DNA of 64,000 bases, taken from the NCBI GenBank assembly GCA_020891255.1, contig BQFW01000002.1, forward strand, positions 1,488,001 to 1,552,000. The letters run 5' to 3'. Both the position numbers and the translations under genes were made by a program. This document shows, piece by piece, positions 1 through 20,851 of this stretch (position 1 is its first letter; the number at the start of each line of letters is the position of its first letter). The stretch is from Entomortierella parvispora E1425 (taxonomy: Eukaryota; Fungi; Mortierellomycota). The notes under the pieces were generated by a model. It did not search any database. It was given only the letters and a program-made list of their open reading frames with translations, and was not told the DNA's origin.

Positions 1-869
1 AGTGCTCGGCTTCGAGCTCAGTCATTCCAGCCGCTAACTGACCTCGATGAACAAGGCCTCTTTGAGCGGCGCTGGTTGGATTTGATGGGCGAGTTATCTC
101 TCGTCCCTAGAGTTAACCCCATGGAGAATTGTCCTGCCCTGTCGTGGACATTCAACGCGTTTCTAAAGAGGATGGTCGAGCCTGCATCTAGTTCCTCTAA
201 ATCAACATCAGACTCACTGAAGAGGATGGCTGGGGCGGTATCGAGTTCATGTAAATCAACGTCAGGCTCGCTGACGAGGATGGTTGAAGCACTATCTAGC
301 TCTTGAAAAGTGACGTCGCCATCAAGTTCACTGGTTGAGGCAGCTTGTTGTTCCTCCAAATTAGCGACGCCATCAGGTTCGCTGAACAAGATGGTTGAAG
401 CGGCATCTAGCTCCTGTAAATCAGCGTAAGGCTCGTTGAAGAGGATGGTTGAGGCGGCATCTAGCTCTTGTATTGCCTCAATAGGAGGCTCAGATGACGT
501 GACTATTGCATGAGACGAGTCTACTTGGTTGCGGACGTTTGACGATGACCATGCAGACAGTGATGATGGCAATACGGGCGGTGATGACGAGGAGAAAGGA
601 GCGTGGGTCTCCCGCTGAATCTCCTTTATCCAAGAGTCAATGGCCCTGAGGCGATCAGAAAGACAAGCTCGCATTGACGAAGAGGCAGGGTCGATGGTAG
701 GAAGAAAGATGATAAGGACAAGAGGATCAATACCTCGGGCTGACATATATTGATATCCATAGTTTATTTATCGTGGTACCACAGCTGTCAATGAATGTTG
801 GATGCCCATGCACAAACAGAGAAGGGTCTTTGCGAAGGTCTTGCGGCAACAGGAATGTTTCAAATTCCA
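1..869 (-). CDS. Hypothetical protein with 18-aa tandem repeats, probably truncated by the left window edge
   Basis: ATG at 869 (or 930). Exon MEFETFLLPQDLRKDPSLFVHGHP...SP ends at a phase-2 GTATTG donor (733) and joins a CAG acceptor (646) into the 18..746 ORF frame. A further GTCAGT donor at 42 suggests the gene continues off-window. Confidence 0.55.
160..480 (-). repeat. 54-nt coding tandem repeat, about 5 units plus a degenerate spacer; consensus LxELDAASTILFSEPDVD
   Basis: AGGATGG-type cores start at 167, 221, 275, 386 and 440 (54-nt spacing, one 111-nt gap); the repeat is visible in the translation. Confidence 0.85.
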
Positions 870-5162: not shown

Positions 5163-6480
5163 ATGTCTTCTTCTCCCATCAAAGTCGTCGTCGTCGGCGG
5201 ATCTTACGCTGGAGTCAATGTCATCAACGGCCTTTTGTCCTCCTCCAAAAAAACCCTCCAGATCACCTTAGTTGAGAGGTAAAAAAGAGTACATGAATAT
5301 GTACTTCGCTTGCACTGGTTTTACCACAATCTTTTCTGTAGTTGCTGACTCTTCCCTTCTGATCGCGATTTACTCTCTCAGAAACGAAGCTCGTCATCAC
5401 AGCGTGGGAGCCTTCCGTGCTTTGGTAGATGCCGAGTATGGTGACAAAATCTGGGTCCCCTACACTAGCTTGTTCCCTAAAGGTTCGTCCCATAAGATCA
5501 TTCGCGACACTTTGGCGGAGGTCCATGATCACCATGTAGTCCTTTCCTCAGGCGTGTCTGTTCAGTTTGACTATTTGGTTCTCTGTACCGGGTCCCGAAA
5601 CCCTGCTCCCGCCAAGTTTGGCCATGTGGCTTCGACCGCGGATGCTGTCGCCATCACGAACAAAGCTCGTGCTGAGCTTTCCAAGAGCAAATCTGTTCTC
5701 ATTGTTGGAGGTGGTGCCTGTGGTGTTGAGCTTGCTGGTGAGATCAAGACTGCCTTCCCAGACAAGAAAGTCACTTTGATCCAGGCCACCTCAGGTTTGG
5801 TGGATTATCCCGGCTTCTCTCAGGCTTTTGGTACTTCTGCCCAGAAGCACCTTCAGAACTTGGGCGTGGACGTGGTTTTGAATGAACGTCCTACGATCGA
5901 GGGATTGAACCTTGATAATCCTGTCCAAGCATCTCCCGTCACCCTCCGCACCAAGGACGGCAAGACCATCGAGTCAGACTTGCAGTTCCTGTCTGTTGGT
6001 ATCGTCGTTGATACTTCCTACATCTCTACGCTCAAGCCTGTCGGCGTGGCTAACTTTGATTCAAAGTCTTTGGTCGATGCTGACCGACATGTTCTCAAAA
6101 TCAAAGATACCATGCAGTTGGCCGATCCCAACTTCCCCCATATCTTTGCTGTGGGCGACTGCACCAACTTCTCGGAGGTTCCAACGGCTGCCGCTTGTAA
6201 ATTCACTGGAGCCACAGCGGCCAAGAACTTGTTGCAATTGATCAATCTCTCCTCCACCAACTCACCTTCGGTCCTGGAGGTCCAAGCCGCAGAGAAGAAG
6301 GCTAAGCTTGGAAAGGGCTCTATGCCCGGGGGCATGATGGTGTTGGCCACAGGCCCCACCACTGGAGTTTCCTCTTTGCCCCTCTTCGGCACTCGATTCG
6401 GCAGCTTTTTCGCAAGAATGTTGAAGTCCAAGGATCTCATGATCGGTGGTGTGTTCTCGGACATGAGGATCGCCAAGTAA
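5163..6480 (+). CDS. AIFM2: AIFM2/FSP1 (AMID)-like oxidoreductase, copy B (tandem paralog)
   Basis: Intron 5279-5381 at the same phase-2 position as copy A. Motifs VVVGGSYAG, DYLVLCTG, IVGGGACGVELAGE and IFAVGD. Confidence 0.88.
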
Positions 6481-6830
6481 CAAAAATCTCCCAAACAACA
6501 AAATACGAGGAACAACGAACTTTGTACTCACATCTCCACTCACAAAGCATATCCATCACATCGAAAAGTTTCTCGTTCAAGTTCAATGCTGTCCATACCA
6601 TTTCGTAATCAACCATAATAAAAACCTGTCGAGAGCTAAACATCTGTAACTTTCAAATCCATGAAGGGGTACCGAACACTCTTTTTCGGGTATTTCTGGC
6701 TCCAAAGAATAATAATACTAAAAAAAAAAATCTCGCCGCAAGTTTTTGATATCGATTTATTGTTCTCTTTCGTTCTCCATGCTATGGGAATGCAGGGTAA
6801 AACAGAAAAAAAATACACGTCCACCCTAAT

Positions 6831-8244
<1,414 letters not shown>

Positions 8245-8542
8245 GATTGAAGATGATTTTTGAAGAGGGAGAACAGCGGCACAAGGCGCAGCCCTGCCTT
8301 TAATAATTCCCCTCCGGGCTTGAAATTCATCACGTGAGTTTTCGATGAGGCTGCGGCCCTCCGCTGCTGTGCGGCCTGTGCCCATGCCAGTTCCTTCAGC
8401 CCTCGTTCATTCTTCCAGTCCCTTCATTCCTTCATTCCTCCATCCCTCTCATCCACCTTCGTCTGTATAGTCAATCAGTTCACTTGCTTGGACTTTTGCA
8501 TTTCCACTCGACCTCCCTTCGTCATTTCTACGACGACAGCTG
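8245..8542. promoter_or_regulatory. Short divergent intergenic region shared by RPS23 and the BRF-like gene
   Basis: 298 nt between head-to-head ATGs. Contains palindromic TCACGTGA (8330-8337), GATGAG (8344-8349) and a pyrimidine-rich tract. Confidence 0.6.
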
Positions 8543-10693
8543 ATGCCCTCCTCGAAGGGTTCGACGACAGAAATCTCGCTTCACGCCACCAACTTGAAAG
8601 ACAATGCCATCCATATCCCCGCCAATGAATCCATCATGAAGCCAAGAACAGCCTGCGAAAGCTGTGGCGGAAATAATGTCGAGGTGCATCATGGAGAGCT
8701 TGTCTGTACAGGCTGTGGTACAATCCTGGAAAGGAGTGTGCTCGTAAATACCGATCTAGGACTCACGCAGGTGAACGTTGTTGGGCGGGACCGAAATGCC
8801 AACCGCCGACAGTTGGCTCAGGTTGCGTACGGTGGTGCTGGGAAGAAGCTCGAAGTCGCCAGAGCGGCTCGTTTCCAACGGACGATGATGGTAGAGAGTC
8901 TTCTCGGTACTGTAGCCTTTTCGATTGGATTAGGAGAGAACGACGTCAAGCGTGCGCTTTATCTGTGGGGGCATCTTCCTGTGCCCACATCCGGTGGAAA
9001 GGAGCGGAGGGTGACTCGCAGGGCGCTAGCCTGTCTCTATCTGTGCTCCAAGGAATCGAAAAAGGGCGTTACTCTTGTCGAAATAGCCGCCCGCCTGTCG
9101 ATAGACCTGTTCAAGCTTGGTGCAGAATACAAGAGGATCAAAGCTGAGCTGGCCAACAAAAGGATCATCGACTACTCTCACCCTTGCTTTTTTACCGAAG
9201 ATGACATTTGGATCCTTTTGGACAGGATTATGATCATTGGCTCTGCTGCTTCTATCCAGAGAGGCGATTCGGATCGTCTAACGCCACAGCTCAAGGAAGC
9301 GCTTGGAATCAATGCCGAGGATCGAGCTGATCGTCTGCGCAAGATATGGTCCTCTTCCCAAAAATGTCTGAAGATCGCTATGGATGCTGGTCTTGCCACT
9401 GGTCGTCGATCACAGGCAGTAGTTGCAGCCTGTCTGATGATGACTATACAGATCCAGCTTCAGCTCACTGAGTGCCCCAAGTGCCTAGTGGAATTTGTGT
9501 GTCAATTGTTCAGCATTCCTGAGCATACAGCAGCTGCCCGATACAAAGAGCTGCAGAGCTGCATGTTATCATGGGCTCGCCGACTTCCATTTATCCCACA
9601 TTCAAAAAAGATCACTGGCTCTCGACTGGTCTACTACCTGGAGGACGTCTTGCGACATTTCGGACATTTAGATGAACTCAACAAGAATCTCTGGGGATTG
9701 CTGGACAATCCGATTTGCGACGATTCGGATCAAGAGGATGGTGATCAGGATGAGAGTGACGATGGGCAGCATAGAGCCGACGACCAGGCTCCAGTTTCAA
9801 GCAGTTCTCTTTCTAGTGAAGGCCTAAACTCAAACGGGAGTTGTGTCACACAGTCAAGCGAGTCCAGTATTGTGCCCATAGACAACGACTCTTCGCACAA
9901 CAACAGTTCAAGATGTACTTCCATCGACGAGTCATCGTTTGAGCCAGTTTACCCGCCTTCTTTCGTTGCCAACCAAAAACGGCGTCATAACCAGGCAAGC
10001 TTGATTGGGATTGCAAAAGAGCAGATGCCCAACGACAAGGTGCGATACTACGACCAAAAACGTCTGGACTGGATTAAATGCCTTTTGAAGCAAGGAGCAA
10101 GGTCAGAACAGGATATTATATCTGCCTCCGACACGAGCCTCGCCAGATGGTGTGCAGAGTACGAATTAGAAGCCTCTGGAATTACTCGATCCAAGCCATC
10201 TCCGCAAGAGCTGGACTCATGCGACCTTTCGGAGCGGGATCTTCCAGAGGAGGAGCTAGGGCTCTATTTGAGAAGCGAGCAAGAAAGAAAGACGTTATGG
10301 AGAGTTGTTGCCCCGGATTACCTTGAGTCTGAGAAGCGCGCCGAAGAAAACAAAGAAAAAAAAACTGCCGCCCAGGAGCGTAGGATTCAACGAAAGCGTC
10401 TGACCCAGAGTCAATCCGCTGAAGGTCAGCATAGCGTCAAGAGAGCTCGATCATCAAAGCTCTGCTGGGACGCAATTTCGGATACAGAGGATGCTGGAAT
10501 TAAGGACGGTGCCCACCAACCGAGCACAACTGGCACCTCGTTGGACAACACTGTGGGGCATTTGGATGCTGGCAGCTGCAAAGATCCATTTGAACAGCGG
10601 CTGGATTACATCGTTGAGCGCGATTACGGGTGCGGATACGGAAATGAGGATGACTATGAGGAGGAAGGAGAGGAGGAGGCAGACTATTATTGA
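8543..10693 (+). CDS. TFIIB-related factor of the BRF family (BRF2-like), intronless, 716 aa
   Basis: Zn ribbon CESC..CTGC; two cyclin-fold-like repeats (LACLYLCSKE; LATGRRSQAVVAAC); acidic C-terminal segment DLPEEELGLYLRSEQE resembling the BRF TBP-binding region. Confidence 0.8.
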   Translation: MPSSKGSTTEISLHATNLKDNAIHIPANESIMKPRTACESCGGNNVEVHHGELVCTGCGTILERSVLVNTDLGLTQVNVVGRDRNANRRQLAQVAYGGAGKKLEVARAARFQRTMMVESLLGTVAFSIGLGENDVKRALYLWGHLPVPTSGGKERRVTRRALACLYLCSKESKKGVTLVEIAARLSIDLFKLGAEYKRIKAELANKRIIDYSHPCFFTEDDIWILLDRIMIIGSAASIQRGDSDRLTPQLKEALGINAEDRADRLRKIWSSSQKCLKIAMDAGLATGRRSQAVVAACLMMTIQIQLQLTECPKCLVEFVCQLFSIPEHTAAARYKELQSCMLSWARRLPFIPHSKKITGSRLVYYLEDVLRHFGHLDELNKNLWGLLDNPICDDSDQEDGDQDESDDGQHRADDQAPVSSSSLSSEGLNSNGSCVTQSSESSIVPIDNDSSHNNSSRCTSIDESSFEPVYPPSFVANQKRRHNQASLIGIAKEQMPNDKVRYYDQKRLDWIKCLLKQGARSEQDIISASDTSLARWCAEYELEASGITRSKPSPQELDSCDLSERDLPEEELGLYLRSEQERKTLWRVVAPDYLESEKRAEENKEKKTAAQERRIQRKRLTQSQSAEGQHSVKRARSSKLCWDAISDTEDAGIKDGAHQPSTTGTSLDNTVGHLDAGSCKDPFEQRLDYIVERDYGCGYGNEDDYEEEGEEEADYY

Positions 10694-11256
10694 GAAACGC
10701 GTTCCTGGCATTGCCGTTGTATAGTAATAAGAAAATTGTATATTGTATCATGAAGCACAAACTCGCCTGCCAAGCACCGTTGCCCGTCCCTCCGTATGCT
10801 TAGTCGCTGTGTCACCATCGCAACGTTACAAAGGATCGGCCCACGACCTTCTCTTCACGTGCTGCAGGTGCTCACACGTCTCTCACCCCGGTCGCCTGGG
10901 TGATTGTTTTCGTGCATTAAGGCCGTGTGGGTCGGGTTGTCCTTCTGTCCTTCCTTTTTCGCTCCTCTTCCTCTTGTCGTTCCTTCTCCCTTTCTTCTCC
11001 CTTTCTTCTCCCCTTGTCTTCTAATCCTTTCCGTGCTTGGGTGGTCATCGCGCTCATTCCATCCTATTCTTCTGCTCCATCGCATCCGTTCCAGTCCCGC
11101 CTGCATCTCTTTCATCTCTTGTAGCCCATTCCAGGGTCCAAAACCCCGTCCGGCCCTTCCTCAACTCACCTTCTCCACATATCCTTCCCAGAAGATAACA
11201 AAAAAGAAGATTATATACCCTCACTGTCACCTCTCCGTTGAGCAGCAATAACGATC

Positions 11257-12892
11257 ATGACCAACACACAGTCCAAACTGGCTCTTTACCAAACACTGGT
11301 CCCACGAAAGTACATCACCGGGCTCAAATTGCAGCTGCAGCGGACTCTTTTGATCGGTCTCTCGTTGCTCAAGACCCATCGACGCAAGGCCATCCTGCTT
11401 TCCTTAGGACCCTCCACGATCCTCAAGTTGATTACTGTGATTCTGCCTATCATCAAGATCTTGCCTCCGACGATCAAGGCCATCAGAGCATTGAGTTACT
11501 TTAGTGGAGGCAGCAGCAGAAATAGTGGCAACAACACAACGCATGCAGGAGGCAACAGCGGCATCAATGCAGGAACAGGAGCCTCAGGATCAATGATCGA
11601 CGGCTTCGGATTGAGCATGGATGAACTCTGTGAGATCACCTGGACACCAGCAGAGGAGATGTATTGGGAGCGCGTCAATGCCATGGTCACTCGGTATGGA
11701 CTGTGCAAGACTCTGGGCGTTACCCTGGCAGGAGTCAAACCTGGAAGGGTCGAGGTCATCATGCCATTCAGGGCCGAAGTCTCGGGTGAAGGCGGCGCTT
11801 TTCATGGTAAGAGCACCAACGACGGAAAGGCGAAAACAACCAAAGTCCCCTTTCTGTGTCTCTAAAATACGGAATTTTCAGCATCATACTTACTCGAGCG
11901 CTTTTCCTCTTGTTTTTATATTCGGCTTCTGACTCATAGCAAGCTTGCTGCCAACATTGGTGGCCTTGACAAGTCAGTTGACAGGATTGACGCTTCTGCC
12001 CCGCCATTTCACGCTCAAGCCCATTGACTTTAAATGCAACATTCTCTCGGACTGTGACGAATCCACATATCTCTTGGTCGCCCGAGGCGCGGTCGTGGTC
12101 CGAGGTGATCATAGTATCACAATCAAGATTGAAGTTTTGAAGGCCAGTGGACTTGTCCCAGGATCGACCAAAGAGGTGTCACCGTCAGCCAATGTTGGAC
12201 CTTCGTTCTTTTCATGGAAGAGCTGGGTTGGTAACACATCGACAACCTCAACAACGGTCGCCAACAACAACAACAGTAATGCAGCGGATATTCTTGTACC
12301 CGGTACAGGGATTGAGAGTAGTCAATTGATCGTGTGCGCTTCAGGAATGCAGACCAGTGTGATTGTTCGTGCAGGCACGGACCCACTTGGAGAAGAGGAG
12401 AGGGAGATGGGTCGATTGAGACGGGAGCGGGAGCTGAGATTGAGGACCTCGGCTTCGTCCTCGTCAGCGTCCTTAGCACGCGTGCCCTCGAGCGCCTCTG
12501 CTCGCCATTCACATGAGGACGAGGAGGATGCAATTGTTTTGGGAGACAGTTTCCAAAACGTTTCTTTGCTTTCAAATTTGGTCCGACCCCTTTCTTCAAG
12601 ACCTTTGTCTCCAACATCACCCACACCGGCAGTATCCGCAACAGCATCAATGCCAGTAGCCGCTGTAGCGGCCACTCGCTCTCTGGATAGTTCAGTGTAC
12701 GACATGGTATCCCCTTCCACCTCTTCATCGATACTGAAAGAGTCCAAGGAGTCAAATGACCATCTTGCTACAGCTTCAACGACGACATCGACTCTTTCTT
12801 ACGCATCAGCGGTTCGCTATGGTATCGAACATGAGGGCCATGAGCACCCAGTATATGAGGAGACCAGTGATACGGAGGCATGGCAACGGTAA
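11257..12892 (+). CDS. HotDog-fold (PaaI/thioesterase-like) protein with hydrophobic N-terminus and Ser-rich tail, 2 exons
   Basis: Intron 11807-11939 joins the ORFs in frame. Pattern LGVTLAGVKPGRVEVIMPF...GAFHA...IDFKCNIL...ARGAVVVRG is HotDog-like. Confidence 0.6.
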
Positions 12893-13158
12893 ATCATAAT
12901 AAAAAAAAGCTATTTACATTTTTTCTGTTGAAATATTGGTTTGTTATTTTGAAAAAAAGTGCGATTCGTTCCATGTGGAAGAGACAGGGAACAAAAGGTG
13001 CAAGAAAAAACACATATTAAAAGAATATTATAAGGTAGAGACTAGTTGGTTGGAGAAAAATAAAGCTGAAAGAAAGGGTATCAAGGGCAGGAACACAGAA
13101 TAAAGAATAAAAAAATGGTTGAGGGGTGCTGTCATTCATGCAGCAGGGGTAAAGCTCT

Positions 13159-16100
13159 TTATGCAACAGTGTCAACGACTTGGGTTGGTTGCGATTCGAA
13201 GATGTCCTTCTTCTCCTTTTCTGAAGCCTCCGAGCCGACATCCAGAGTCTTCATAGCCGAGATCTTTTCTGTCTCGGTATCTTGGACAGCGAGCATCTCA
13301 ACCGAGTCCTGGGCCGAATCCACCTGTTCTTCCAAGACAAGTTCGAACTCCATGACCTTTTGCTCTGGCTCTTGAACGAACTCTTCGTCCTTCACTGCAG
13401 CTGTCGCCGACTTTGTTTCGGAGGCTGGCTGCTGGTCAGGTGTCTCTGGCGTCTTCACTTGGTCATCTTCCTTCAAAGTTTGAGCGCCATCGCTAGGCGA
13501 AGGCGAGGGTGGAAGCGGTATCATTGCCGCAACGTCCCCCACCTGGTTTTCTTCCACTTCTTCTTCTTCTTCTTCCACCAATATTTCAGCCGTCTTCACA
13601 ACTTCCATAGCTGCAACCGATCCTGGAATAGGGGGTAGGGCCGAAGTGGGTGGAGAGGGGACGGAGGAAGCCGCTCCAGGCGGTAGAGGAGCTAGACTCG
13701 AAAGCCGAGAAGAAAGACTAGAGTCCCGAGTAGAATTATGGTTCTTTCTGGGGACCGGTCCACCAAGAGATGCGGTGGTTATTCCGGCTGCAAAGGACCC
13801 CAAAGAGGATTGAGAAGACAAGGAAGAGGTCGAGGTCGAATGTCTGTGATTTGGAGGATGATGATGGTGATGAGGCTGATGTGTAGACGTTGGTCGGCTG
13901 GAATTGGGGCTGGTCGTGGCCGAGTTTGTGCTCGAGATTGAGAGAGCAGAGCTAGTCGAGGTTGCAGCAGCGACTACCGGAATATCAGGTTGCTGGGTGG
14001 ATGGAGGTGCCGGTAGCACCAAGCGACTGTTGAGAGGTAAGGAGATGTGCTTGCTCATCAACAGGCTGGTCCTGTGTGGGTTCGTGGACGGGGACGCTGG
14101 GGCCGAATCTTGACCAGATTTTGAAACCGACTGAGTCGCGACTGCGCCCAGCCTGGGAGAAGGCGTGGTGGTGCCGTTAGTCCGGATGGAGAACTGGGTA
14201 TCGTGAGCCATTGACATCAGGGCCGACTCTTGGGATTGACAACGCACGCGGGGCTTGGGATTAGAGGGTCGGTGAGCGGTGAGGATCTCGGGGTCATGGT
14301 GTCGAGGCACAATCTGAATCCGACGACCGGAACCATTAGAGAGCTGGTGGGTCAAACCTCCTCGGCCATTGGGAGAACTTGACTCGGGTTTCCCTTGAGA
14401 GGGCACGTCGGGCAAGGGCAGCGTGGGAGCAGGGGACAAAGGCCGGTCGGGTTGAGAAGTCATATAACCGGGCATGGTACTTGATCTGGACGGACTTCTG
14501 AAAGAGGCTGCCGATTCTCCTGGGTTGCCGAGACTCACATGCCGCTGTCGGACAGGAAAATCCCTATTGTGGCGAATGCTTGTGATCCTGGAAAGAGCTC
14601 CCTCTGATCCGTCCACGTTGTTCTCGGGTGTTGGAGACAGAGGTCTGGCATGGGGGGATGCAGCAGCGCTACCACTGTGCGATGGCGTCACTTGGGTCGA
14701 GCTTCGGAGAGAGACGCTCATCGGTCTGTGGACACTCCTTGGTGGAGGGGCAATGACAAGCGAGTTTCTCGGACTGGACCTGCTCATTTGACTTGGACTC
14801 AGTGGCCTTGACACGGGGCTCAACGGCCGTGAGGGACTGCCCACCATTCTTTGCGAACTTCGACGCGGCAGCGTAGCCGTACCAGAGTCTGGACGGTCTG
14901 ACGTTATGGAAGTACGACGGCTATAAAGACTGCCTCCACTCACGCTGCCGTGACCGGTGCTGCCCGAGCGACGGGCAGAAACATCGTGGTCGTAGCTGTA
15001 ATTGCCATCGTGATCGTCATACATGTCAATAATGGAGCTGCGTCGGCCATAGACATGTGTTGTATCCGCATTTGATGAAAGAGTTGAGCGATGTCTCTCA
15101 TCGTACGAGGGGACGTCTGCGCGTTCCATGACAGTGCTAAAGCTGGCATAGTCTGCTGTCGCATGAGCCGATGCAATGGTGGTACTGTTTGTCCTTCTGC
15201 GTGTGCCCTGTGTTTGCTCCTGCTCGTATCCTTGTGGCCTCGATCCTGGAATAGGCGTCGGCGGCTTTGACACCGTAGCCCGAGGGGGTGGGCTCAGACT
15301 TGGATTGGTCATCGATGACGGCGATGGATAAAGATCTGCATAAAACTGCGAGGGGTGAGGCGGCCGTGGGGGAGGCGAGGACGATCTAGGGACGATGGAC
15401 GTCGAATCGGACGTCAGTGCAGGCGAGTAAGGTCGAAGGATGTCTGCAGCCGCAAGCTCGTCCCCAGGGGGTCGTGACGAGTCAATCTGCCGATTCCGAT
15501 ACTGGAGGACTGTGCCCTTGAGGGCTCGAAGCCAAACGGCCATTTCCGCGGCTGTGTCCGCGAGCACGAACCATTCCTTCTCGTTCGGACTCGTGATTTG
15601 GAGACAGTACCGCTTGCCAGAGAATATGTCCGTGACACACACGATCGTCTCTGCAGTCAACGGCAGCGACTCCATGAGCGGATGCTGTGGATCCGCAGAC
15701 TTGAAGCAATGCAGTGACTTGTGCGTGAGGACAAAATACCTCCGCTTCCACTGCTTGCGCGAAAAGAAGGTCCTGGATGAAAACTTTGTCAGGTATCCCG
15801 TGTTGGCGGCCGAGCGCTCAAAGTTTCGCACGCGGAGCTGCAGCGGCACTTTAGTTCTCGACTCTGTGCCGGACTTGTTGCTCCCGTTGCTGGGCAGCGG
15901 TACTGAGGATTGCTTCAATCTCTCTATTGAGCCCTGTCTGGTCGACTGGGCCGGGTTATATTCTGTGCTGCCGTTCCCGTGCGAATAGGTTCCCAGAGGT
16001 GAAGGCAACGAGCTGGCTTTACTCATTGGCCGAGGCCTCTGTGGCCGGGACTGGCTAGTGATTGAAGAATTATCGTCATCTGTAGTCAGAGGACTCATGG

Positions 16101-16554
16101 TGGAGCTAGAGGAGTAAAAAGAATCTGTGGTTCCGTTCGAGTGGGCCGAATATGTTGATTGAGCCAGTGCGCTGGCCGGGGAAAGATCGCCGTTGAACTT
16201 GTTGTTGTATTGAGGCCTGAGTCTGTCGTTGGAGATGGCGCCGTTCCCGTTGCTTCTGTTGTAGTTGTAATGATATCCTCCTAGATCGGACTGCACCGGC
16301 ATCCCGTTGGTGTGCCTGGTCTCGGTCGGAAAGTGCTGATGTTGTTGGTTGTTCCTAGATGGATGGAGCGCGTTTTGAAGTTGCGTAAAGGCTCTTCGGA
16401 CGCCACTTGCAGACGTGGTTTCGTGGAAGAGACTGTGATGATGATAGTGGTGGTTGCTGGCAGAACTGCTGCTTCGAGAACCGGGTATAGGGGAGGGGCT
16501 GGGCGACTGCTCGGGCGAGGTGTGACTCGAGTACGAGGTCTTTTGTCGCAGCAT
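13159..16554 (-). CDS. PH-domain protein with long Ser/Pro-rich regions, 1131 aa
   Basis: Intronless ORF; PH signature GYLTK...QWKRRYFVL...WFVLADTAAEMAVWLRAL. Confidence 0.82.
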   Translation of the reverse strand: MLRQKTSYSSHTSPEQSPSPSPIPGSRSSSSASNHHYHHHSLFHETTSASGVRRAFTQLQNALHPSRNNQQHQHFPTETRHTNGMPVQSDLGGYHYNYNRSNGNGAISNDRLRPQYNNKFNGDLSPASALAQSTYSAHSNGTTDSFYSSSSTMSPLTTDDDNSSITSQSRPQRPRPMSKASSLPSPLGTYSHGNGSTEYNPAQSTRQGSIERLKQSSVPLPSNGSNKSGTESRTKVPLQLRVRNFERSAANTGYLTKFSSRTFFSRKQWKRRYFVLTHKSLHCFKSADPQHPLMESLPLTAETIVCVTDIFSGKRYCLQITSPNEKEWFVLADTAAEMAVWLRALKGTVLQYRNRQIDSSRPPGDELAAADILRPYSPALTSDSTSIVPRSSSPPPRPPHPSQFYADLYPSPSSMTNPSLSPPPRATVSKPPTPIPGSRPQGYEQEQTQGTRRRTNSTTIASAHATADYASFSTVMERADVPSYDERHRSTLSSNADTTHVYGRRSSIIDMYDDHDGNYSYDHDVSARRSGSTGHGSVSGGSLYSRRTSITSDRPDSGTATLPRRSSQRMVGSPSRPLSPVSRPLSPSQMSRSSPRNSLVIAPPPRSVHRPMSVSLRSSTQVTPSHSGSAAASPHARPLSPTPENNVDGSEGALSRITSIRHNRDFPVRQRHVSLGNPGESAASFRSPSRSSTMPGYMTSQPDRPLSPAPTLPLPDVPSQGKPESSSPNGRGGLTHQLSNGSGRRIQIVPRHHDPEILTAHRPSNPKPRVRCQSQESALMSMAHDTQFSIRTNGTTTPSPRLGAVATQSVSKSGQDSAPASPSTNPHRTSLLMSKHISLPLNSRLVLPAPPSTQQPDIPVVAAATSTSSALSISSTNSATTSPNSSRPTSTHQPHHHHHPPNHRHSTSTSSLSSQSSLGSFAAGITTASLGGPVPRKNHNSTRDSSLSSRLSSLAPLPPGAASSVPSPPTSALPPIPGSVAAMEVVKTAEILVEEEEEEVEENQVGDVAAMIPLPPSPSPSDGAQTLKEDDQVKTPETPDQQPASETKSATAAVKDEEFVQEPEQKVMEFELVLEEQVDSAQDSVEMLAVQDTETEKISAMKTLDVGSEASEKEKKDIFESQPTQVVDTVA

Positions 16555-19017: not shown

Positions 19018-20445
19018 TTAGCCCATGATCTCTTCAATCTCACTTATGGTCTTTGGCACCGTCGTCAAGTTGTCGATGCCTGTCTCCGTGATAACGACAC
19101 AGTCCTCGATTCTCACTCCTCCTAGACGTTGGAATCGATCGAGGACCTCCCAGTCCACGAAGCGCGACAGAGTCTCGTCCTGCTTGGCCTCTTCAAGAAT
19201 ATACTCTGTAAAATATACCCCGGGCTCGACTGTCACCACAAAGCCCGCTTCCATCTTTCGTCGCATTCTCAAATACCTGAGACCGGGAGCCTGAATCCGC
19301 TCCACGCCCTTGGGGTAACCCCCAACGTCATGGACATCCAATCCAATCATATGGCCCAATCCATGAGGGAAAAAGATTCCGTCCACATGGTGCTCCAACA
19401 TGGTCTCGACTGAAAACTCTGATCGGAGGACGCCTGCTTGTTGAAGACCTCTGACGGCGATCTTGGCCGCTAGACGATGCATGGCCTCCCATTCCACTCC
19501 AGGCTTCAAAGCCTCCAGGACCGCCATCTGCATCTCGAGCACAATCTCGTACAGGGTTCTCATATCCGGAGTGAACTTTCCGTTCAAGGGATAAGTGCGT
19601 GTGATGTCCGAGGCATAGCAATCCTGTTCGGCGCCTGCATCGACCAGGATCAATTGACCAAGATCCTGATTGAACGAGGTCGAGTTCCGTCCATAGTACA
19701 ACGTTGCCGCATTGGATCCCACTCCGACAATTGGATTGTAGGCCTGGATCTTGGCGCCGCGACGGCCCGTCTCATATCGGAACAAGGCATCGAGTTCCGT
19801 CTCGGATTCACATTCCTTGGCGGCCTTCATCAGGACCACATGGGCATTGGAGGAAAGAAGGTTGATCTTCCTCATGCGTTCAATCTCGAATGCAGACTTG
19901 TGGATTCGGGCCTCGACAATGGCCTCCTTGAGCAATGAACTGTCAACGGCACCAAGGACAAGTCCTTCGGGGACTTCATGGGCATGAAGGGTATAAAGGG
20001 TCGAAGCACCAGACTTGTTGATCACAGACAGAAGCTCTGGTGCTCAACGGATCTCGTCCACATCGTACATGTTCAACAGTTCGGACGCGGATGGGTCCCG
20101 ACCTGCCCAAACGACCTCGTGCTCAGACTGCTGATGGGGGAGTAGGGTAAGATGGTGAGTTTTGATATCATAGACGACGTGCGCACCGTGCTCGTTGTAA
20201 CCAGTCAGGTAATAAAAGTTGGACTCTTGTCTGAACACGAGCTCCTGAAGAGCAAATATGAAAAAAAAGGCGGTTAGAGCTTTTCGACTAAACAGCACAA
20301 AAAAAAAACTCGGTCAGATTACCACATCAGTGTCGTGTCTCTCTTTCAAGGTATCACTCTTCAGGTAAACTAATCCTTCAGAAAGGCCGAGAATCCTGGC
20401 CACCTTGGCCCAATGTTGTTTGGCGGGGTACTTTGTCACGGTCAT
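19018..20445 (-). CDS. PEPD: Xaa-Pro dipeptidase (prolidase, M24B) carrying an in-frame TGA at 20046-20044
   Basis: Intron 20322-20245. Motifs FRQESNFYYLTG, VDAG..YASDITRT, HGLGHMIGLDVHD, TVEPG and GVRIED are intact. Exon 2 reads ...GAG ATC CGT TGA GCA CCA... in one frame. Confidence 0.9.
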
Positions 20446-20851
20446 ATCTGGGAGTAAAAGTTTCAATTTAGTCGCGCCATCCGAAAAAAAAAATGATAAA
20501 ATGACGCGTTGAACTGAACGCGAATGTAAACTAATGAGGCGGGAAATGTACCTACCCTTTTTGTGTGTGAAGATGAATGAGTTGAAGATGGAGAGGTGTG
20601 GAGAATGGGAGAAAAGGCAGAGATCATCTTTTTTTTTTAACTTTGGCCTTTGACTAAGCTGGTCAGCAGCTGCTCCCACGGCGATACGGCCAGGTTGTTC
20701 TCACAAAACAATTGGGAGATCGAGCACGCGGCGCCTTCTGCCTTGGTGCATTGTTGAGCGCATTTGGTGTCCATTCAACGGTAAAGCTTCTTTCACTTGC
20801 TCTCTCTCTCACGGTCAATGGTTTTCGGTCTTTTTATATGGGGAATCAACT

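What the first reader, a model, noticed from the sequence alone, without database searches (positions are those of the whole stretch)
8543..10693. BRF2-like Pol III factor in a fungus, with a Ser in place of the redox-sensing molecular-pin Cys
Seen: Zn ribbon, two cyclin-like repeats, then ELQSCMLSWARRLPFI...YLEDVLRHFGHL (EDVLRH at 9641), a disordered spacer, PVYPPSF (9950-9964) and a late DLPEEELGLYLRSEQE. Known: yeasts use only Brf1; metazoan BRF2 serves gene-external type-3 promoters (U6, RNase P RNA, tRNA-Sec) together with SNAPc, and has an LPPC molecular pin (human Cys361) that senses oxidation. Inference from remembered alignments: the helical segment after repeat 2, the xPPx motif and the short YLR-type TBP anchor follow the BRF2 layout, and the sequence is far more divergent than canonical fungal Brf1. 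This would imply a second TFIIIB and a type-3 Pol III promoter system in early-diverging fungi, without the Cys redox switch.
Basis: partly seen in the sequence, partly recalled or inferred. Interest (0 to 1): 0.75.

Follow-up and report, generated by a model that had tools for sequence, protein, structure and literature searches.

The report
Fungal BRF2-like second Pol III factor
This soil fungus (Entomortierella parvispora) has, besides its normal Brf1, a second, fast-evolving Brf-type transcription factor that groups with animal BRF2, a protein that papers describe as vertebrate-only and absent from fungi. Whether it drives a U6-type upstream promoter system is untested.

Summary

It is a TFIIB-family protein of the "BRF2-like" kind:
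- Pfam's BRF2-like second-cyclin model scores exactly at its cut-off.
- The seven best Foldseek matches are all human BRF2 chains.
- A profile search finds about 21 Mortierellomycota clusters. The next-nearest relatives are BRF2-like proteins of other fungi, protists and echinoderm BRF2. None of these carries Pfam's Brf1 domain.

A tree places it with animal BRF2 at moderate support (90/89). Placement inside fungal Brf1 is rejected (p-AU 1.6e-62). Placement as sister to all Brf1 is not rejected (p 0.12).

The same assembly encodes a canonical Brf1 on another contig, so this is a second Brf.

- PP[S/A][F/Y] is the usual state in both BRF2-like proteins and Brf1. The Ser is therefore ancestral, not a lost switch.
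- The family also occurs in Basidiomycota, not only in early-diverging fungi.
- The C-terminus keeps Brf1-like blocks that animal BRF2 lacks.

I could not test for SNAPc or type-3 promoters. An unchecked scan note reports a SNAPC4-like gene elsewhere in this genome.

The parts
8543..10693 (+). Whole gene: intronless ORF of 716 aa plus stop; BRF2-like TFIIB-family protein
8654..8716 (+). Zn ribbon, C38-x2-C41 ... C55-x2-C58
   Evidence: Cys invariant or nearly invariant. Pfam Zn_Ribbon_TF is weak here but matches 17/21 family members. Aligns to the human BRF2, TFIIB and Brf1 ribbons.
8837..9157 (+). First cyclin repeat (about residues 99-205)
   Evidence: AF2 helices 99-205 at pLDDT above 90. 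HMMER aligns 37-203 to yeast Brf1 3-168 and to human TFIIB.
9284..9577 (+). Second cyclin repeat (about residues 248-345)
   Evidence: Pfam PF00382 at 268-337 and PF21886 BRF2-like at 266-372. Aligns to human BRF2 198-304.
9581..9706 (+). Post-cyclin LPF helix plus arch-like helices (residues 347-388, RLPFI...LVYYLEDVLRHFGHL). Counterpart of the human BRF2 280-314 module that binds SNAPC4.
   Evidence: Residue-by-residue alignment to human BRF2. hhalign to echinoderm BRF2 runs through this segment, while the alignment to Brf1 stops before it. LPW/LPF and YYL[DE]D[IV]L are conserved across the clade. Role in human taken from PMC11696126.
9707..9937 (+). Disordered acidic/Ser-rich spacer (residues 389-465)
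   Evidence: pLDDT mostly below 50 (segments 402-406, 410-444 and 453-465). Poorly aligned and length-variable. Highest dN of the gene's parts.
9944..10021 (+). PVYPPSF 'pin'-type motif plus the following basic helix (residues 468-493)
   Evidence: Shares a column with PPC of Diadema BRF2 and PP[SA][FY] of most relatives. HMMER aligns it to yeast Brf1 RPPSF. hhalign E 4e-6 to non-Mortierella BRF2-like, 1.2e-3 to Brf1, 0.037 to animal BRF2 alone.
10028..10210 (+). Helical module (residues 496-556, ...WIKCLLKQG...), function unknown. Present in fungal and protist BRF2-like proteins, absent from animal BRF2.
   Evidence: AF2 helices 502-544 at block-mean pLDDT 88-95; alignment blocks.
10238..10423 (+). 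TBP-anchor-type region (residues 566-627, DLPEEELGLYLRSEQERKTLW...)
   Evidence: Pfam BRF1 TBP-binding domain at 18 bits, below the 25-bit cut-off. Aligns to human BRF2 381-407. hhalign E 4e-9 to animal BRF2 over 35 columns and 1.7e-5 to Brf1 over 91 columns. Atlas features point to the Brf1 TBP-binding domain at 0.85, a lead only.
10439..10483 (+). KRARSSKLCWDAISD block (residues 633-647), resembling Brf1 homology region III (SKKINY[DE]AL)
   Evidence: Invariant R636 S637 S638 K639 A644 S646 D647 among four relatives. Present in the Mortierellomycota and Basidiomycota BRF2-like proteins and in S. pombe and Rhodosporidiobolus Brf1.
10484..10690 (+). Disordered acidic tail (residues 648-716)
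   Evidence: pLDDT below 50 from residue 654.

Best explanation
The gene encodes a second Brf-type subunit of TFIIIB. It belongs to a widespread but largely undescribed eukaryotic clade that includes animal BRF2 and is distinct from the canonical Brf1 encoded elsewhere in the same genome.

Proposed mechanism; each step is inferred from homology and none was shown here:
1. The N-terminal Zn ribbon and linker reach into RNA polymerase III.
2. The two cyclin repeats clamp TBP and the DNA flanking a TATA-like element.
3. The post-cyclin LPF helix plus arch helix forms a docking surface for an upstream promoter-bound factor. In humans that factor is SNAPC4.
4. After a disordered spacer, the PPSF motif and basic helix sit at the TBP/DNA/cyclin junction.
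5. The DLPEEELGLYLR... region binds the convex face of TBP.

Because the pin residue is Ser, as in Brf1 and most BRF2-like proteins, no Cys-based redox control is expected.

Shown here: domain content, homology, phylogenetic position, coexistence with Brf1, synteny and purifying selection. Inferred: binding to TBP and Pol III, and the set of target genes.
For: - Pfam: PF21886 BRF2-like at 27.0 bits (cut-off 27) and TFIIB repeat at 33.6 bits. In the family, 12/21 members hit PF21886 and 0/21 hit the Brf1 domain PF07741. In the Brf1 clade, 32/40 hit PF07741.
- The ten nearest non-Mortierella relatives: 8/10 hit PF21886 at E <= 0.01 (three of them above its 27-bit cut-off) and none hits PF07741.
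- Source names: Basidiobolus, Bifiguratus, Dispira, Mycoemilia, Phascolomyces, Umbelopsis, Microbotryomycetes, Sistotremastrum, Acrasis, Echinamoeba, and echinoderm 'TFIIIB 50 kDa subunit-like'.
- Careful IQ-TREE (64 rows, TFIIB/TFB outgroup): Brf1 100/99, including E. parvispora Brf1. The split {TFIIB+Brf1} | {animal BRF2 + protist + fungal BRF2-like} has 90/89. The fungal BRF2-like clade has 93/89 and the Mortierellomycota clade 100/100.
- AU test rejects placement inside fungal Brf1 (dlnL 140, p 1.6e-62).
VIA-align gives BRF2 Z 15.0-15.3 with 246-266 residues aligned, TFB/TFIIB 13.3-14.2 with about 195, and Brf1 13.0.
- hhalign to echinoderm BRF2 runs through the arch (E 3e-30).
- Anchor: hhalign E 4e-9 to animal BRF2.
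- Canonical Brf1 (730 aa, PF08271+PF00382+PF07741) lies on BQFW01000001.1 of the same assembly GCA_020891255.1. This gene is on BQFW01000002.1.
- Both kinds also coexist in Gryganskiella, Basidiobolus, Mycoemilia, Phascolomyces, Pseudohyphozyma and Microbotryomycetes sp. JL201.
- dN/dS is 0.30, and the locus is syntenic in three genomes.
Against: - The clade joining it to animal BRF2 has only moderate support (90/89), and the bootstrap had not fully converged.
- The AU test does not reject the Mortierellomycota family as sister to all Brf1 (dlnL 24, p 0.12).
- PF21886 scores exactly at threshold.
- The hhalign score of the core is higher against Brf1 (E 7.5e-38) than against the small animal BRF2 alignment (E 3e-30).
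- Language-model features rank Brf1 clusters first (0.91 versus 0.88-0.89 for BRF2-like clusters).
- The C-terminus keeps Brf1-like blocks I, II and III.
- Only two of the four human SNAPC4-contacting residues are conservatively kept: A281->P349 and W282->F350, but V285->H353 and L286->K355 (alignment; residue list from PMC11696126).
- No expression data: no RNA run was listed.
- SNAPc and promoter architecture were not examined.
Confidence: 0.68

Rival explanations
1. It is an old, fast-evolving paralogue of Brf1 rather than a true orthologue of animal BRF2. Long-branch attraction pulls it towards BRF2. It would serve as an alternative TFIIIB subunit on ordinary or condition-specific Pol III genes, without any SNAPc-type system.
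For: - AU does not reject the Mortierellomycota family as sister to Brf1 (p 0.12).
- The C-terminus has Brf1-like blocks: PPSF plus a basic stretch like DPPAF/RPPSF, a sub-threshold Pfam BRF1 domain at 566-627, and an SKKINY[DE]AL-like block.
- The hhalign core score is higher against Brf1.
- Atlas features rank Brf1 clusters first.
- Branches are long and evolution is fast.
Against: - Placement inside fungal Brf1 is rejected (p 1.6e-62).
- The same kind of protein occurs in Heterolobosea and Amoebozoa. The fungal clade, the largely unnamed non-fungal rows and animal BRF2 form separate, supported groups, so a fungal-specific duplication does not fit.
- The LPW/LPF helix plus arch is shared with animal BRF2 and has no room in Brf1, where about 25-30 residues separate the end of cyclin 2 from DPPxF.
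- 0/21 family members and 0/69 further relatives reach Pfam BRF1 at E <= 0.001.
Confidence: 0.2
2. It is a TFIIB-like factor that serves another polymerase. It could be a specialised TFIIB for Pol II snRNA-type promoters, or a divergent Pol I factor of the Rrn7/TAF1B kind.
For: With the family profile, human TFIIB is the best single PDB sequence match for the ribbon plus first cyclin (2.3e-16, against 6e-12 for Brf1 and 2e-11 for BRF2). The fold alone does not discriminate well: Z differences are about 1-2.
Against: - TFIIB has no C-terminal extension, whereas this protein has the Brf-type PP motif and TBP anchor.
- No Pfam Rrn7 family matches the protein or its family. Only 1 of 69 distant relatives has a weak Rrn7 zinc-ribbon hit.
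- The tree separates TFIIB/TFB from it at 97/91.
Confidence: 0.08
3. It is a decaying or non-functional duplicate.
For: Divergence is fast: 36.5% identity between genera against 76% for Brf1. No expression data are available.
Against: - The 716-codon frame is intact.
- It is conserved, syntenic and intronless in three genomes.
- dN/dS is 0.18-0.25 in the folded parts.
- There are 21 representative clusters in the family with conserved motifs.
Confidence: 0.02

Closest known systems
Human/vertebrate BRF2 (TFIIIB 50 kDa subunit; PDB 4roc, 5n9g, 8ity)
   Same: Zn ribbon and two cyclin repeats. A second-cyclin extension with a hydrophobic helix plus arch helix: window 348-373 aligns to human 280-304, and L348/F350/I357/L362/V369 match L280/W282/L288/V293/L300. 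A PP motif downstream. A [DE]-x-E-[LI]-x-x-Y-L-R-[ST]-x-x-E TBP anchor (human 381-407). Best fold match. Coexists with Brf1.
   Different: 716 versus 419 aa. Ser473 stands where human has Cys361. A disordered spacer of about 75 aa separates the arch from the PP motif. An extra helical module (496-556) separates the PP motif from the anchor. The anchor continues into Brf1-like homology II/III sequence and an acidic tail. Sequence identity is only 14-17%. Two of the four SNAPC4-contact residues are not conserved. Function is untested.
Canonical Brf1 (yeast Brf1, PDB 6eu0/6cnb; E. parvispora P0309)
   Same: Ribbon and first cyclin align (E 6e-5 with the single sequence, 6e-12 with the family profile). 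PP[SA]F plus a basic stretch. Homology-II-like TBP-binding region. SKKINY[DE]AL-like block.
   Different: Brf1 lacks the helix-plus-arch module, and its PP motif follows cyclin 2 directly. The protein fails the Pfam BRF1 domain cut-off (18 versus 25 bits). It lies outside the 100/99 Brf1 clade. It is 25.7% identical over 183 aa to the same genome's Brf1. It evolves much faster.
BRF2-like proteins of other fungi and protists (unnamed 'TFIIB-type domain-containing' or hypothetical proteins; Pfam PF21886)
   Same: Whole architecture is shared, including the PP motif, the LLLxG helical module and the anchor (hhalign E 8e-13 over the C-terminal region). Same tree clade (fungal clade 93/89).
   Different: Only about 16-23% identity. 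The SKKIN-type block is shared with the Basidiomycota members but not with most others.
TFIIB / archaeal TFB
   Same: Ribbon and two cyclin repeats. Strong profile match to the ribbon and first cyclin.
   Different: TFIIB/TFB has no C-terminal extension, PP motif or TBP anchor, and forms a separate clade.

Membership tests
BRF2 (TFIIB-related factor 2) | N-terminal Zn ribbon plus two cyclin repeats of the TFIIB family | tested here: met
BRF2 (TFIIB-related factor 2) | BRF2-type second cyclin with the extra hydrophobic helix and arch helix. This is the SNAPC4-binding module, reported absent from Brf1 (PMC11696126). | tested here: met
   Pfam PF21886 at 27.0 bits, equal to its cut-off, covering 266-372. 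Aligns to human BRF2 198-304. hhalign to echinoderm BRF2 extends through the arch, and the alignment to Brf1 stops before it. Motif conservation. This is sequence-level only. Two of the four human contact residues are not conserved.
BRF2 (TFIIB-related factor 2) | Molecular pin LPPC with a redox-sensitive Cys (human C361) | tested here: not met
   The PP is present (P471, P472) and shares a column with PPC of Diadema BRF2, but the residue is Ser473. The position is Ser or Ala in most Mortierellomycota members (19 of 22; Arg in one, gapped in one, and one has PRSF) and in most fungal and protist relatives. Pin-only profile support against animal BRF2 is weak (E 0.037). The motif is shared with Brf1.
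BRF2 (TFIIB-related factor 2) | C-terminal TBP anchor domain | tested here: met
   Aligns to human BRF2 381-407, though at only 4.7 bits. hhalign gives 96% probability and E 4e-9 against echinoderm BRF2. Binding itself was not tested.
BRF2 (TFIIB-related factor 2) | Phylogenetic position with BRF2 and outside Brf1 | tested here: inconclusive
   The ML tree puts it in the clade with animal BRF2 (90/89). Placement inside fungal Brf1 is rejected. Placement as sister to all Brf1 is not rejected (p 0.12).
BRF2 (TFIIB-related factor 2) | Coexists with a separate canonical Brf1 in the genome | tested here: met
   P0309 is on BQFW01000001.1 and this gene on BQFW01000002.1, both in GCA_020891255.1.
BRF2 (TFIIB-related factor 2) | Acts with SNAPc at gene-external (type 3) TATA/PSE promoters such as U6, RNase P RNA and tRNA-Sec | not testable with these tools
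   No SNAPc query sequence and no access to the rest of the genome. The window holds no Rfam or tRNA hits. The only lead is an unchecked scan note of a SNAPC4-like gene in the same genome.
Brf1 | Brf1 TBP-binding domain (Pfam PF07741, homology region II) above threshold | tested here: not met
   18.0 bits against a cut-off of 25. 0/21 family members at E <= 0.001, against 32/40 of the Brf1 clade. A distant resemblance is real (hhalign E 1.7e-5).
Brf1 | Membership of the Brf1 clade | tested here: not met
   It lies outside the 100/99 Brf1 clade. Placement inside fungal Brf1 is rejected at p 1.6e-62.
Rrn7/TAF1B (Pol I TFIIB-like factor) | Rrn7-type zinc ribbon and cyclin domains (Pfam PF11781 and related families) | tested here: not met
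   No hit in the protein or its family.

The most novel reading that the evidence does not exclude
BRF2 is not a vertebrate invention. It would be an ancient eukaryotic paralogue of Brf1 that many fungi keep (Mortierellomycota, Mucoromycota, Zoopagomycota, part of Basidiomycota) together with a SNAPc-like factor. In that case these fungi would run an animal-style, gene-external (type 3) Pol III promoter system for U6, U6atac and similar RNAs. The system would have been lost in the yeasts on which the textbook picture rests. The Cys redox switch would be a late animal addition to an ancestral Ser/Ala pin.
Probability: 0.35. Interest if true: 0.78.

Novelty: new variant of a known kind. Interest (0 to 1): 0.6.

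Why it matters
Papers held in the library state that Brf2 is found only in vertebrates and is absent from plants and fungi (Gouge et al. 2015, PMC4671959). The arch module is treated there as the device that couples TFIIIB to SNAPc (PMC11696126).

Here, a BRF2-like clade coexists with Brf1 in several fungal phyla and in protists. If this holds:
- The Brf1/BRF2 duplication moves far back in eukaryote history.
- The redox-sensing Cys becomes a derived feature.
- Genetically tractable fungi such as Mortierella alpina and Rhodotorula-type yeasts become available for asking what a second TFIIIB does, and how type-3 promoters arose or were lost.

The functional claim is still untested. Domain databases already tag these proteins with the BRF2-like model, so part of this is an annotation gap rather than a discovery.

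Tried and rejected
- RNA evidence: the look-up of sequencing runs listed no RNA run.
- Rfam and ARAGORN on the whole window found nothing. No Pol III gene is therefore available here for promoter inspection.
- SNAPc: there was no way to obtain SNAPC1/3/4 queries from the tools. All three word searches and the single exhaustive search were already spent on the protein itself and on Brf1. Only an unchecked scan note (s1-199116) points to a SNAPC4-like gene.
- Structural test of the pin: the PP motif and anchor fold only on TBP/DNA, and no complex prediction is offered. VIA-align ranges (model 110..475 against 5n9g_F 65..364) are compatible, but at rmsd about 13 Å they are not evidence.
- Pin-only hhalign against animal BRF2 was insignificant (E 0.037).
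- AU test of the Mortierellomycota family plus all Brf1 as one clade was not significant (p 0.12), so BRF2 orthology is not proven by the core alignment alone.
- The first AF2 run with 4 sequences was poor (pLDDT 53) and was replaced by a 76-sequence run (pLDDT 74).
- Literature searches found no paper on BRF2 or SNAPc in fungi. Canzler et al. 2016 on fungal U6 promoters is not held.
- Rejected readings: canonical Brf1, TFIIB, Rrn7 and pseudogene. Reasons are given under the rival explanations and the membership tests.
Full report
**1. What is there**

Window 8543..10693 (+) is a single ATG-to-stop ORF of 716 aa. NCBI's annotation of the same assembly calls the same single-exon gene.
- A CxxC...CxxC ribbon (C38, C41, C55, C58).
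- Two cyclin repeats.
- ...SWARRLPFI...YLEDVLRHFGHL, with E367 at nt 9641.
- A disordered acidic/Ser-rich spacer.
- PVYPPSF at 9944-9964.
- DLPEEELGLYLRSEQE at 10238-10285.

The window lies on contig BQFW01000002.1 of GCA_020891255.1. NCBI names proteins of that assembly as Entomortierella parvispora.

**2. Family scans**

Pfam gives four relevant results:
- TFIIB repeat at 33.6 bits.
- BRF2-like C-terminal cyclin repeat (PF21886) at 27.0 bits over residues 266-372, exactly at its cut-off.
- A sub-threshold Brf1 TBP-binding domain (PF07741, 18 bits against a cut-off of 25) over 566-627.
- A weak TFIIB zinc ribbon.

Against PDB sequences, the N-terminal part matches yeast Brf1 (6e-5) and the second cyclin matches human BRF2 residues 198-304 (1.8e-3).

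**3. Relatives**

The word-based search found only four proteins, all Mortierellaceae. The exhaustive profile search found 22 proteins with E <= 1e-64. Scores then drop sharply to 5e-21 and weaker.

I sorted 130 hits by a tree and by Pfam:

| Group | Rows | Hit Pfam Brf1 domain | Hit PF21886 |
|---|---|---|---|
| Brf1 clade | 40 | 32 | 4 (weak) |
| Mortierellomycota family | 21 | 0 | 12 |
| Remaining rows | 69 | 0 | 37 |

Source names confirm the Brf1 clade: Rozella, Coemansia, Cryptococcus, and insect 'TFIIIB 90 kDa'.

Names for the remaining rows:
- Echinoderm 'TFIIIB 50 kDa subunit-like', which is BRF2.
- Fungi: Basidiobolus, Bifiguratus, Dispira, Mycoemilia, Phascolomyces, Umbelopsis, Microbotryomycetes (three species) and Sistotremastrum (Agaricomycetes).
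- Protists: Acrasis and Echinamoeba.

The ESM Atlas also holds plant clusters that carry PF21886.

**4. A separate Brf1 in the same genome**

Searching with a Paraglomus Brf1 returned canonical Brf1 for many Mortierellaceae. One is 'transcription factor IIIB 90 kDa subunit [Entomortierella parvispora]' (P0309, 730 aa, with PF08271, PF00382 and PF07741). It lies on BQFW01000001.1 of the same assembly. So the genome has two Brf-type genes.

Both kinds also coexist in Gryganskiella, Basidiobolus, Mycoemilia, Phascolomyces, Pseudohyphozyma and Microbotryomycetes sp. JL201.

**5. Phylogeny**

I built a careful IQ-TREE (LG+C20 PMSF, 64 rows, 426 columns). The outgroup was TFIIB/TFB-type rows, two of which I verified against the PDB. 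Support values are ultrafast bootstrap / SH-aLRT:

| Clade or split | Support |
|---|---|
| Brf1 | 100/99 |
| Animal BRF2 | 100/98 |
| Mortierellomycota family | 100/100 |
| Fungal BRF2-like clade | 93/89 |
| {TFIIB + Brf1} versus all BRF2-like rows | 90/89 |

The bootstrap had not fully settled, so these values are rough.

AU tests:
- The family inside fungal Brf1 is rejected (dlnL 140, p 1.6e-62).
- The family as sister to all Brf1 is not rejected (dlnL 24, p 0.12).

**6. Structure**

With a 76-sequence alignment, AF2 gives pLDDT 74 and pTM 0.59. The cyclin repeats score above 90 and the C-terminal helices (472-624) score 79-95.
- Foldseek: the seven best PDB matches are human BRF2 chains (2.4e-7 to 2.9e-6), then TFIIB (2.7e-5), then yeast Brf1 (8.9e-5). 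The first, poorer model gave the same order.
- VIA-align: BRF2 scores Z 15.0-15.3 with 246-266 residues aligned. TFB/TFIIB scores 13.3-14.2 with about 195, and Brf1 scores 13.0.

The Z gaps are small and the rmsd is large, because the two cyclin repeats sit at a different angle in the model. This is supporting evidence, not decisive.

**7. The discriminating segment**

A 2025 structure paper (PMC11696126) defines the BRF2-specific SNAPC4-binding module. It is a hydrophobic helix (280-288) plus the arch helix (291-314), reported absent from Brf1.

HMMER aligns window 343-373 to human 275-304. Hydrophobic positions correspond: L348/L280, F350/W282, I357/L288, L362/V293, V369/L300. V285 and L286, however, face H353 and K355.

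Across the whole BRF2-like set, LPW/LPF and the arch are conserved. Compare YYLEDVLRHF here with YYLDDILRYR in Diadema BRF2.

hhalign of the family against echinoderm BRF2 runs through this segment (E 3e-30, query 33-385). The alignment to Brf1 scores higher (E 7.5e-38) but stops at the end of cyclin 2. In Brf1 only about 25-30 residues separate cyclin 2 from the PP motif.

**8. The 'pin'**

In the 76-sequence alignment, P471-P472-S473-F474 shares a column with:
- PPCF of Diadema BRF2 and of one other animal row.
- PPSY and PPSH of two other animal rows (the PPSH row is the brittle star Amphiura; the PPSY row is unnamed).
- PP[SA][FY] of most fungal and protist relatives.

The same motif with a following basic stretch is standard in Brf1:
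- HMMER aligns it to yeast RPPSF.
- E. parvispora's own Brf1 has DPPAF at 286.
- Rozella Brf1 even has NPPCF.

Ser/Ala is the default state and Cys is a derived, scattered one. Pin-only profile support is good against non-Mortierella BRF2-like proteins (E 4e-6), weak against Brf1 (1.2e-3) and insignificant against animal BRF2 alone (0.037).

**9. The anchor and beyond**

DLPEEELGLYLRSEQE aligns with human BRF2 381-407 (...SDSEIEQYLRTPQE...) and with echinoderm BRF2 (hhalign 96%, E 4e-9, 35 columns). It also aligns over 91 columns with Brf1 homology II (E 1.7e-5).

Downstream, KRARSSKLCWDAISD resembles Brf1's SKKINY[DE]AL block. That block is kept in the Mortierellomycota and Basidiomycota members.

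Between the PP motif and the anchor lies a helical module (496-556, 'LLLxG'). Fungal and protist members share it and animal BRF2 lacks it.

The fungal proteins thus combine a BRF2-type cyclin-2/arch with a fuller, Brf1-like C-terminus. I read this as retention of ancestral Brf features that animal BRF2 has shed.

**10. Constraint**

The gene is intronless in E. parvispora, in a soil-metagenome contig and in Gryganskiella. In the two annotated genomes it sits between a ribosomal uS12 gene and an unnamed gene of about 500 aa; the gene calls on the metagenome contig are fragmentary and show only the upstream Pyr_redox gene.

dN/dS against the closest relative is 0.30 overall and 0.18-0.25 in the folded parts.

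The gene evolves much faster than Brf1. Between E. parvispora and Gryganskiella it is 36.5% identical, against 76% for Brf1.

**11. What could not be shown**

- No RNA run was listed.
- The window contains no tRNA or Rfam hit.
- I could not search the genome for SNAPc or for U6 promoters.
- Other agents' unchecked notes on this genome mention a SNAPC4-like factor, a divergent U6atac gene and an snRNA-like family with a shared promoter. These are leads only.

**12. Literature**

Gouge et al. 2015 state that Brf2 is found only in vertebrates and is absent from plants and fungi. My searches of the held library found no paper describing BRF2 or SNAPc in fungi. Domain databases already attach PF21886 to this very protein.

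**13. Verdict**

This is a real, conserved gene for a second Brf-type factor of the BRF2-like clade, coexisting with Brf1.
- BRF2 orthology is likely but not proven.
- The Ser 'pin' is unremarkable.
- The inferred type-3/SNAPc system is plausible and testable, but not shown.

Noticed in passing
window 19018-20553, minus strand (stop at about 20044-20046): A prolidase-type gene reads ...DVDEIR*APELLSV... with prolidase-like sequence in frame on both sides of a single stop. Another reader has already noted it (s1-201160). It could be a read-through or recoded codon, a sequencing error or a nonsense allele. I did not pursue it.
   Followed up: partly
window about 5540-16554; L003, L004: Gene order is conserved around the BRF2-like gene in the two annotated Mortierellaceae genomes (this window/L002 and Gryganskiella L004): Pyr_redox_2 oxidoreductase, ribosomal protein uS12/S23 (minus strand), BRF2-like, an unnamed gene of about 500 aa with no Pfam hit (window about 11257-12892), then a PH-domain protein on the minus strand. 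On the metagenome contig L003 the gene calls are fragmentary and only Pyr_redox upstream is recognisable.
   Followed up: partly
P0133 (Rozella Brf1), alignment A2: Some canonical Brf1 proteins carry Cys at the pin position: Rozella has NPPCF, and three of 40 Brf1-clade rows have PPC[FY]. A Cys there is therefore not unique to BRF2.
   Followed up: no
ESM Atlas clusters: Two Streptophyta clusters of TFIIB-type proteins (about 500-600 aa) carry the Pfam BRF2-like domain in 37-70% of members. Plants may therefore also hold members of this clade. Their relation to the named plant BRP/BRF proteins was not examined.
   Followed up: no
P0045, P0132, P0141, P0145, P0049, P0057 (Basidiomycota BRF2-like): Agaricomycete and Microbotryomycete BRF2-like proteins keep a C-terminal [ST]K[KR]IN..AL block like Brf1 homology region III. 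Mucoromycota, Zoopagomycota, protist and animal members lack it.
   Followed up: partly
window 1-64000: There are no tRNA genes and no Rfam family above gathering score in 64 kb. GC and GC skew rise locally at 14-18 kb and 28-30 kb. I did not examine these.
   Followed up: no
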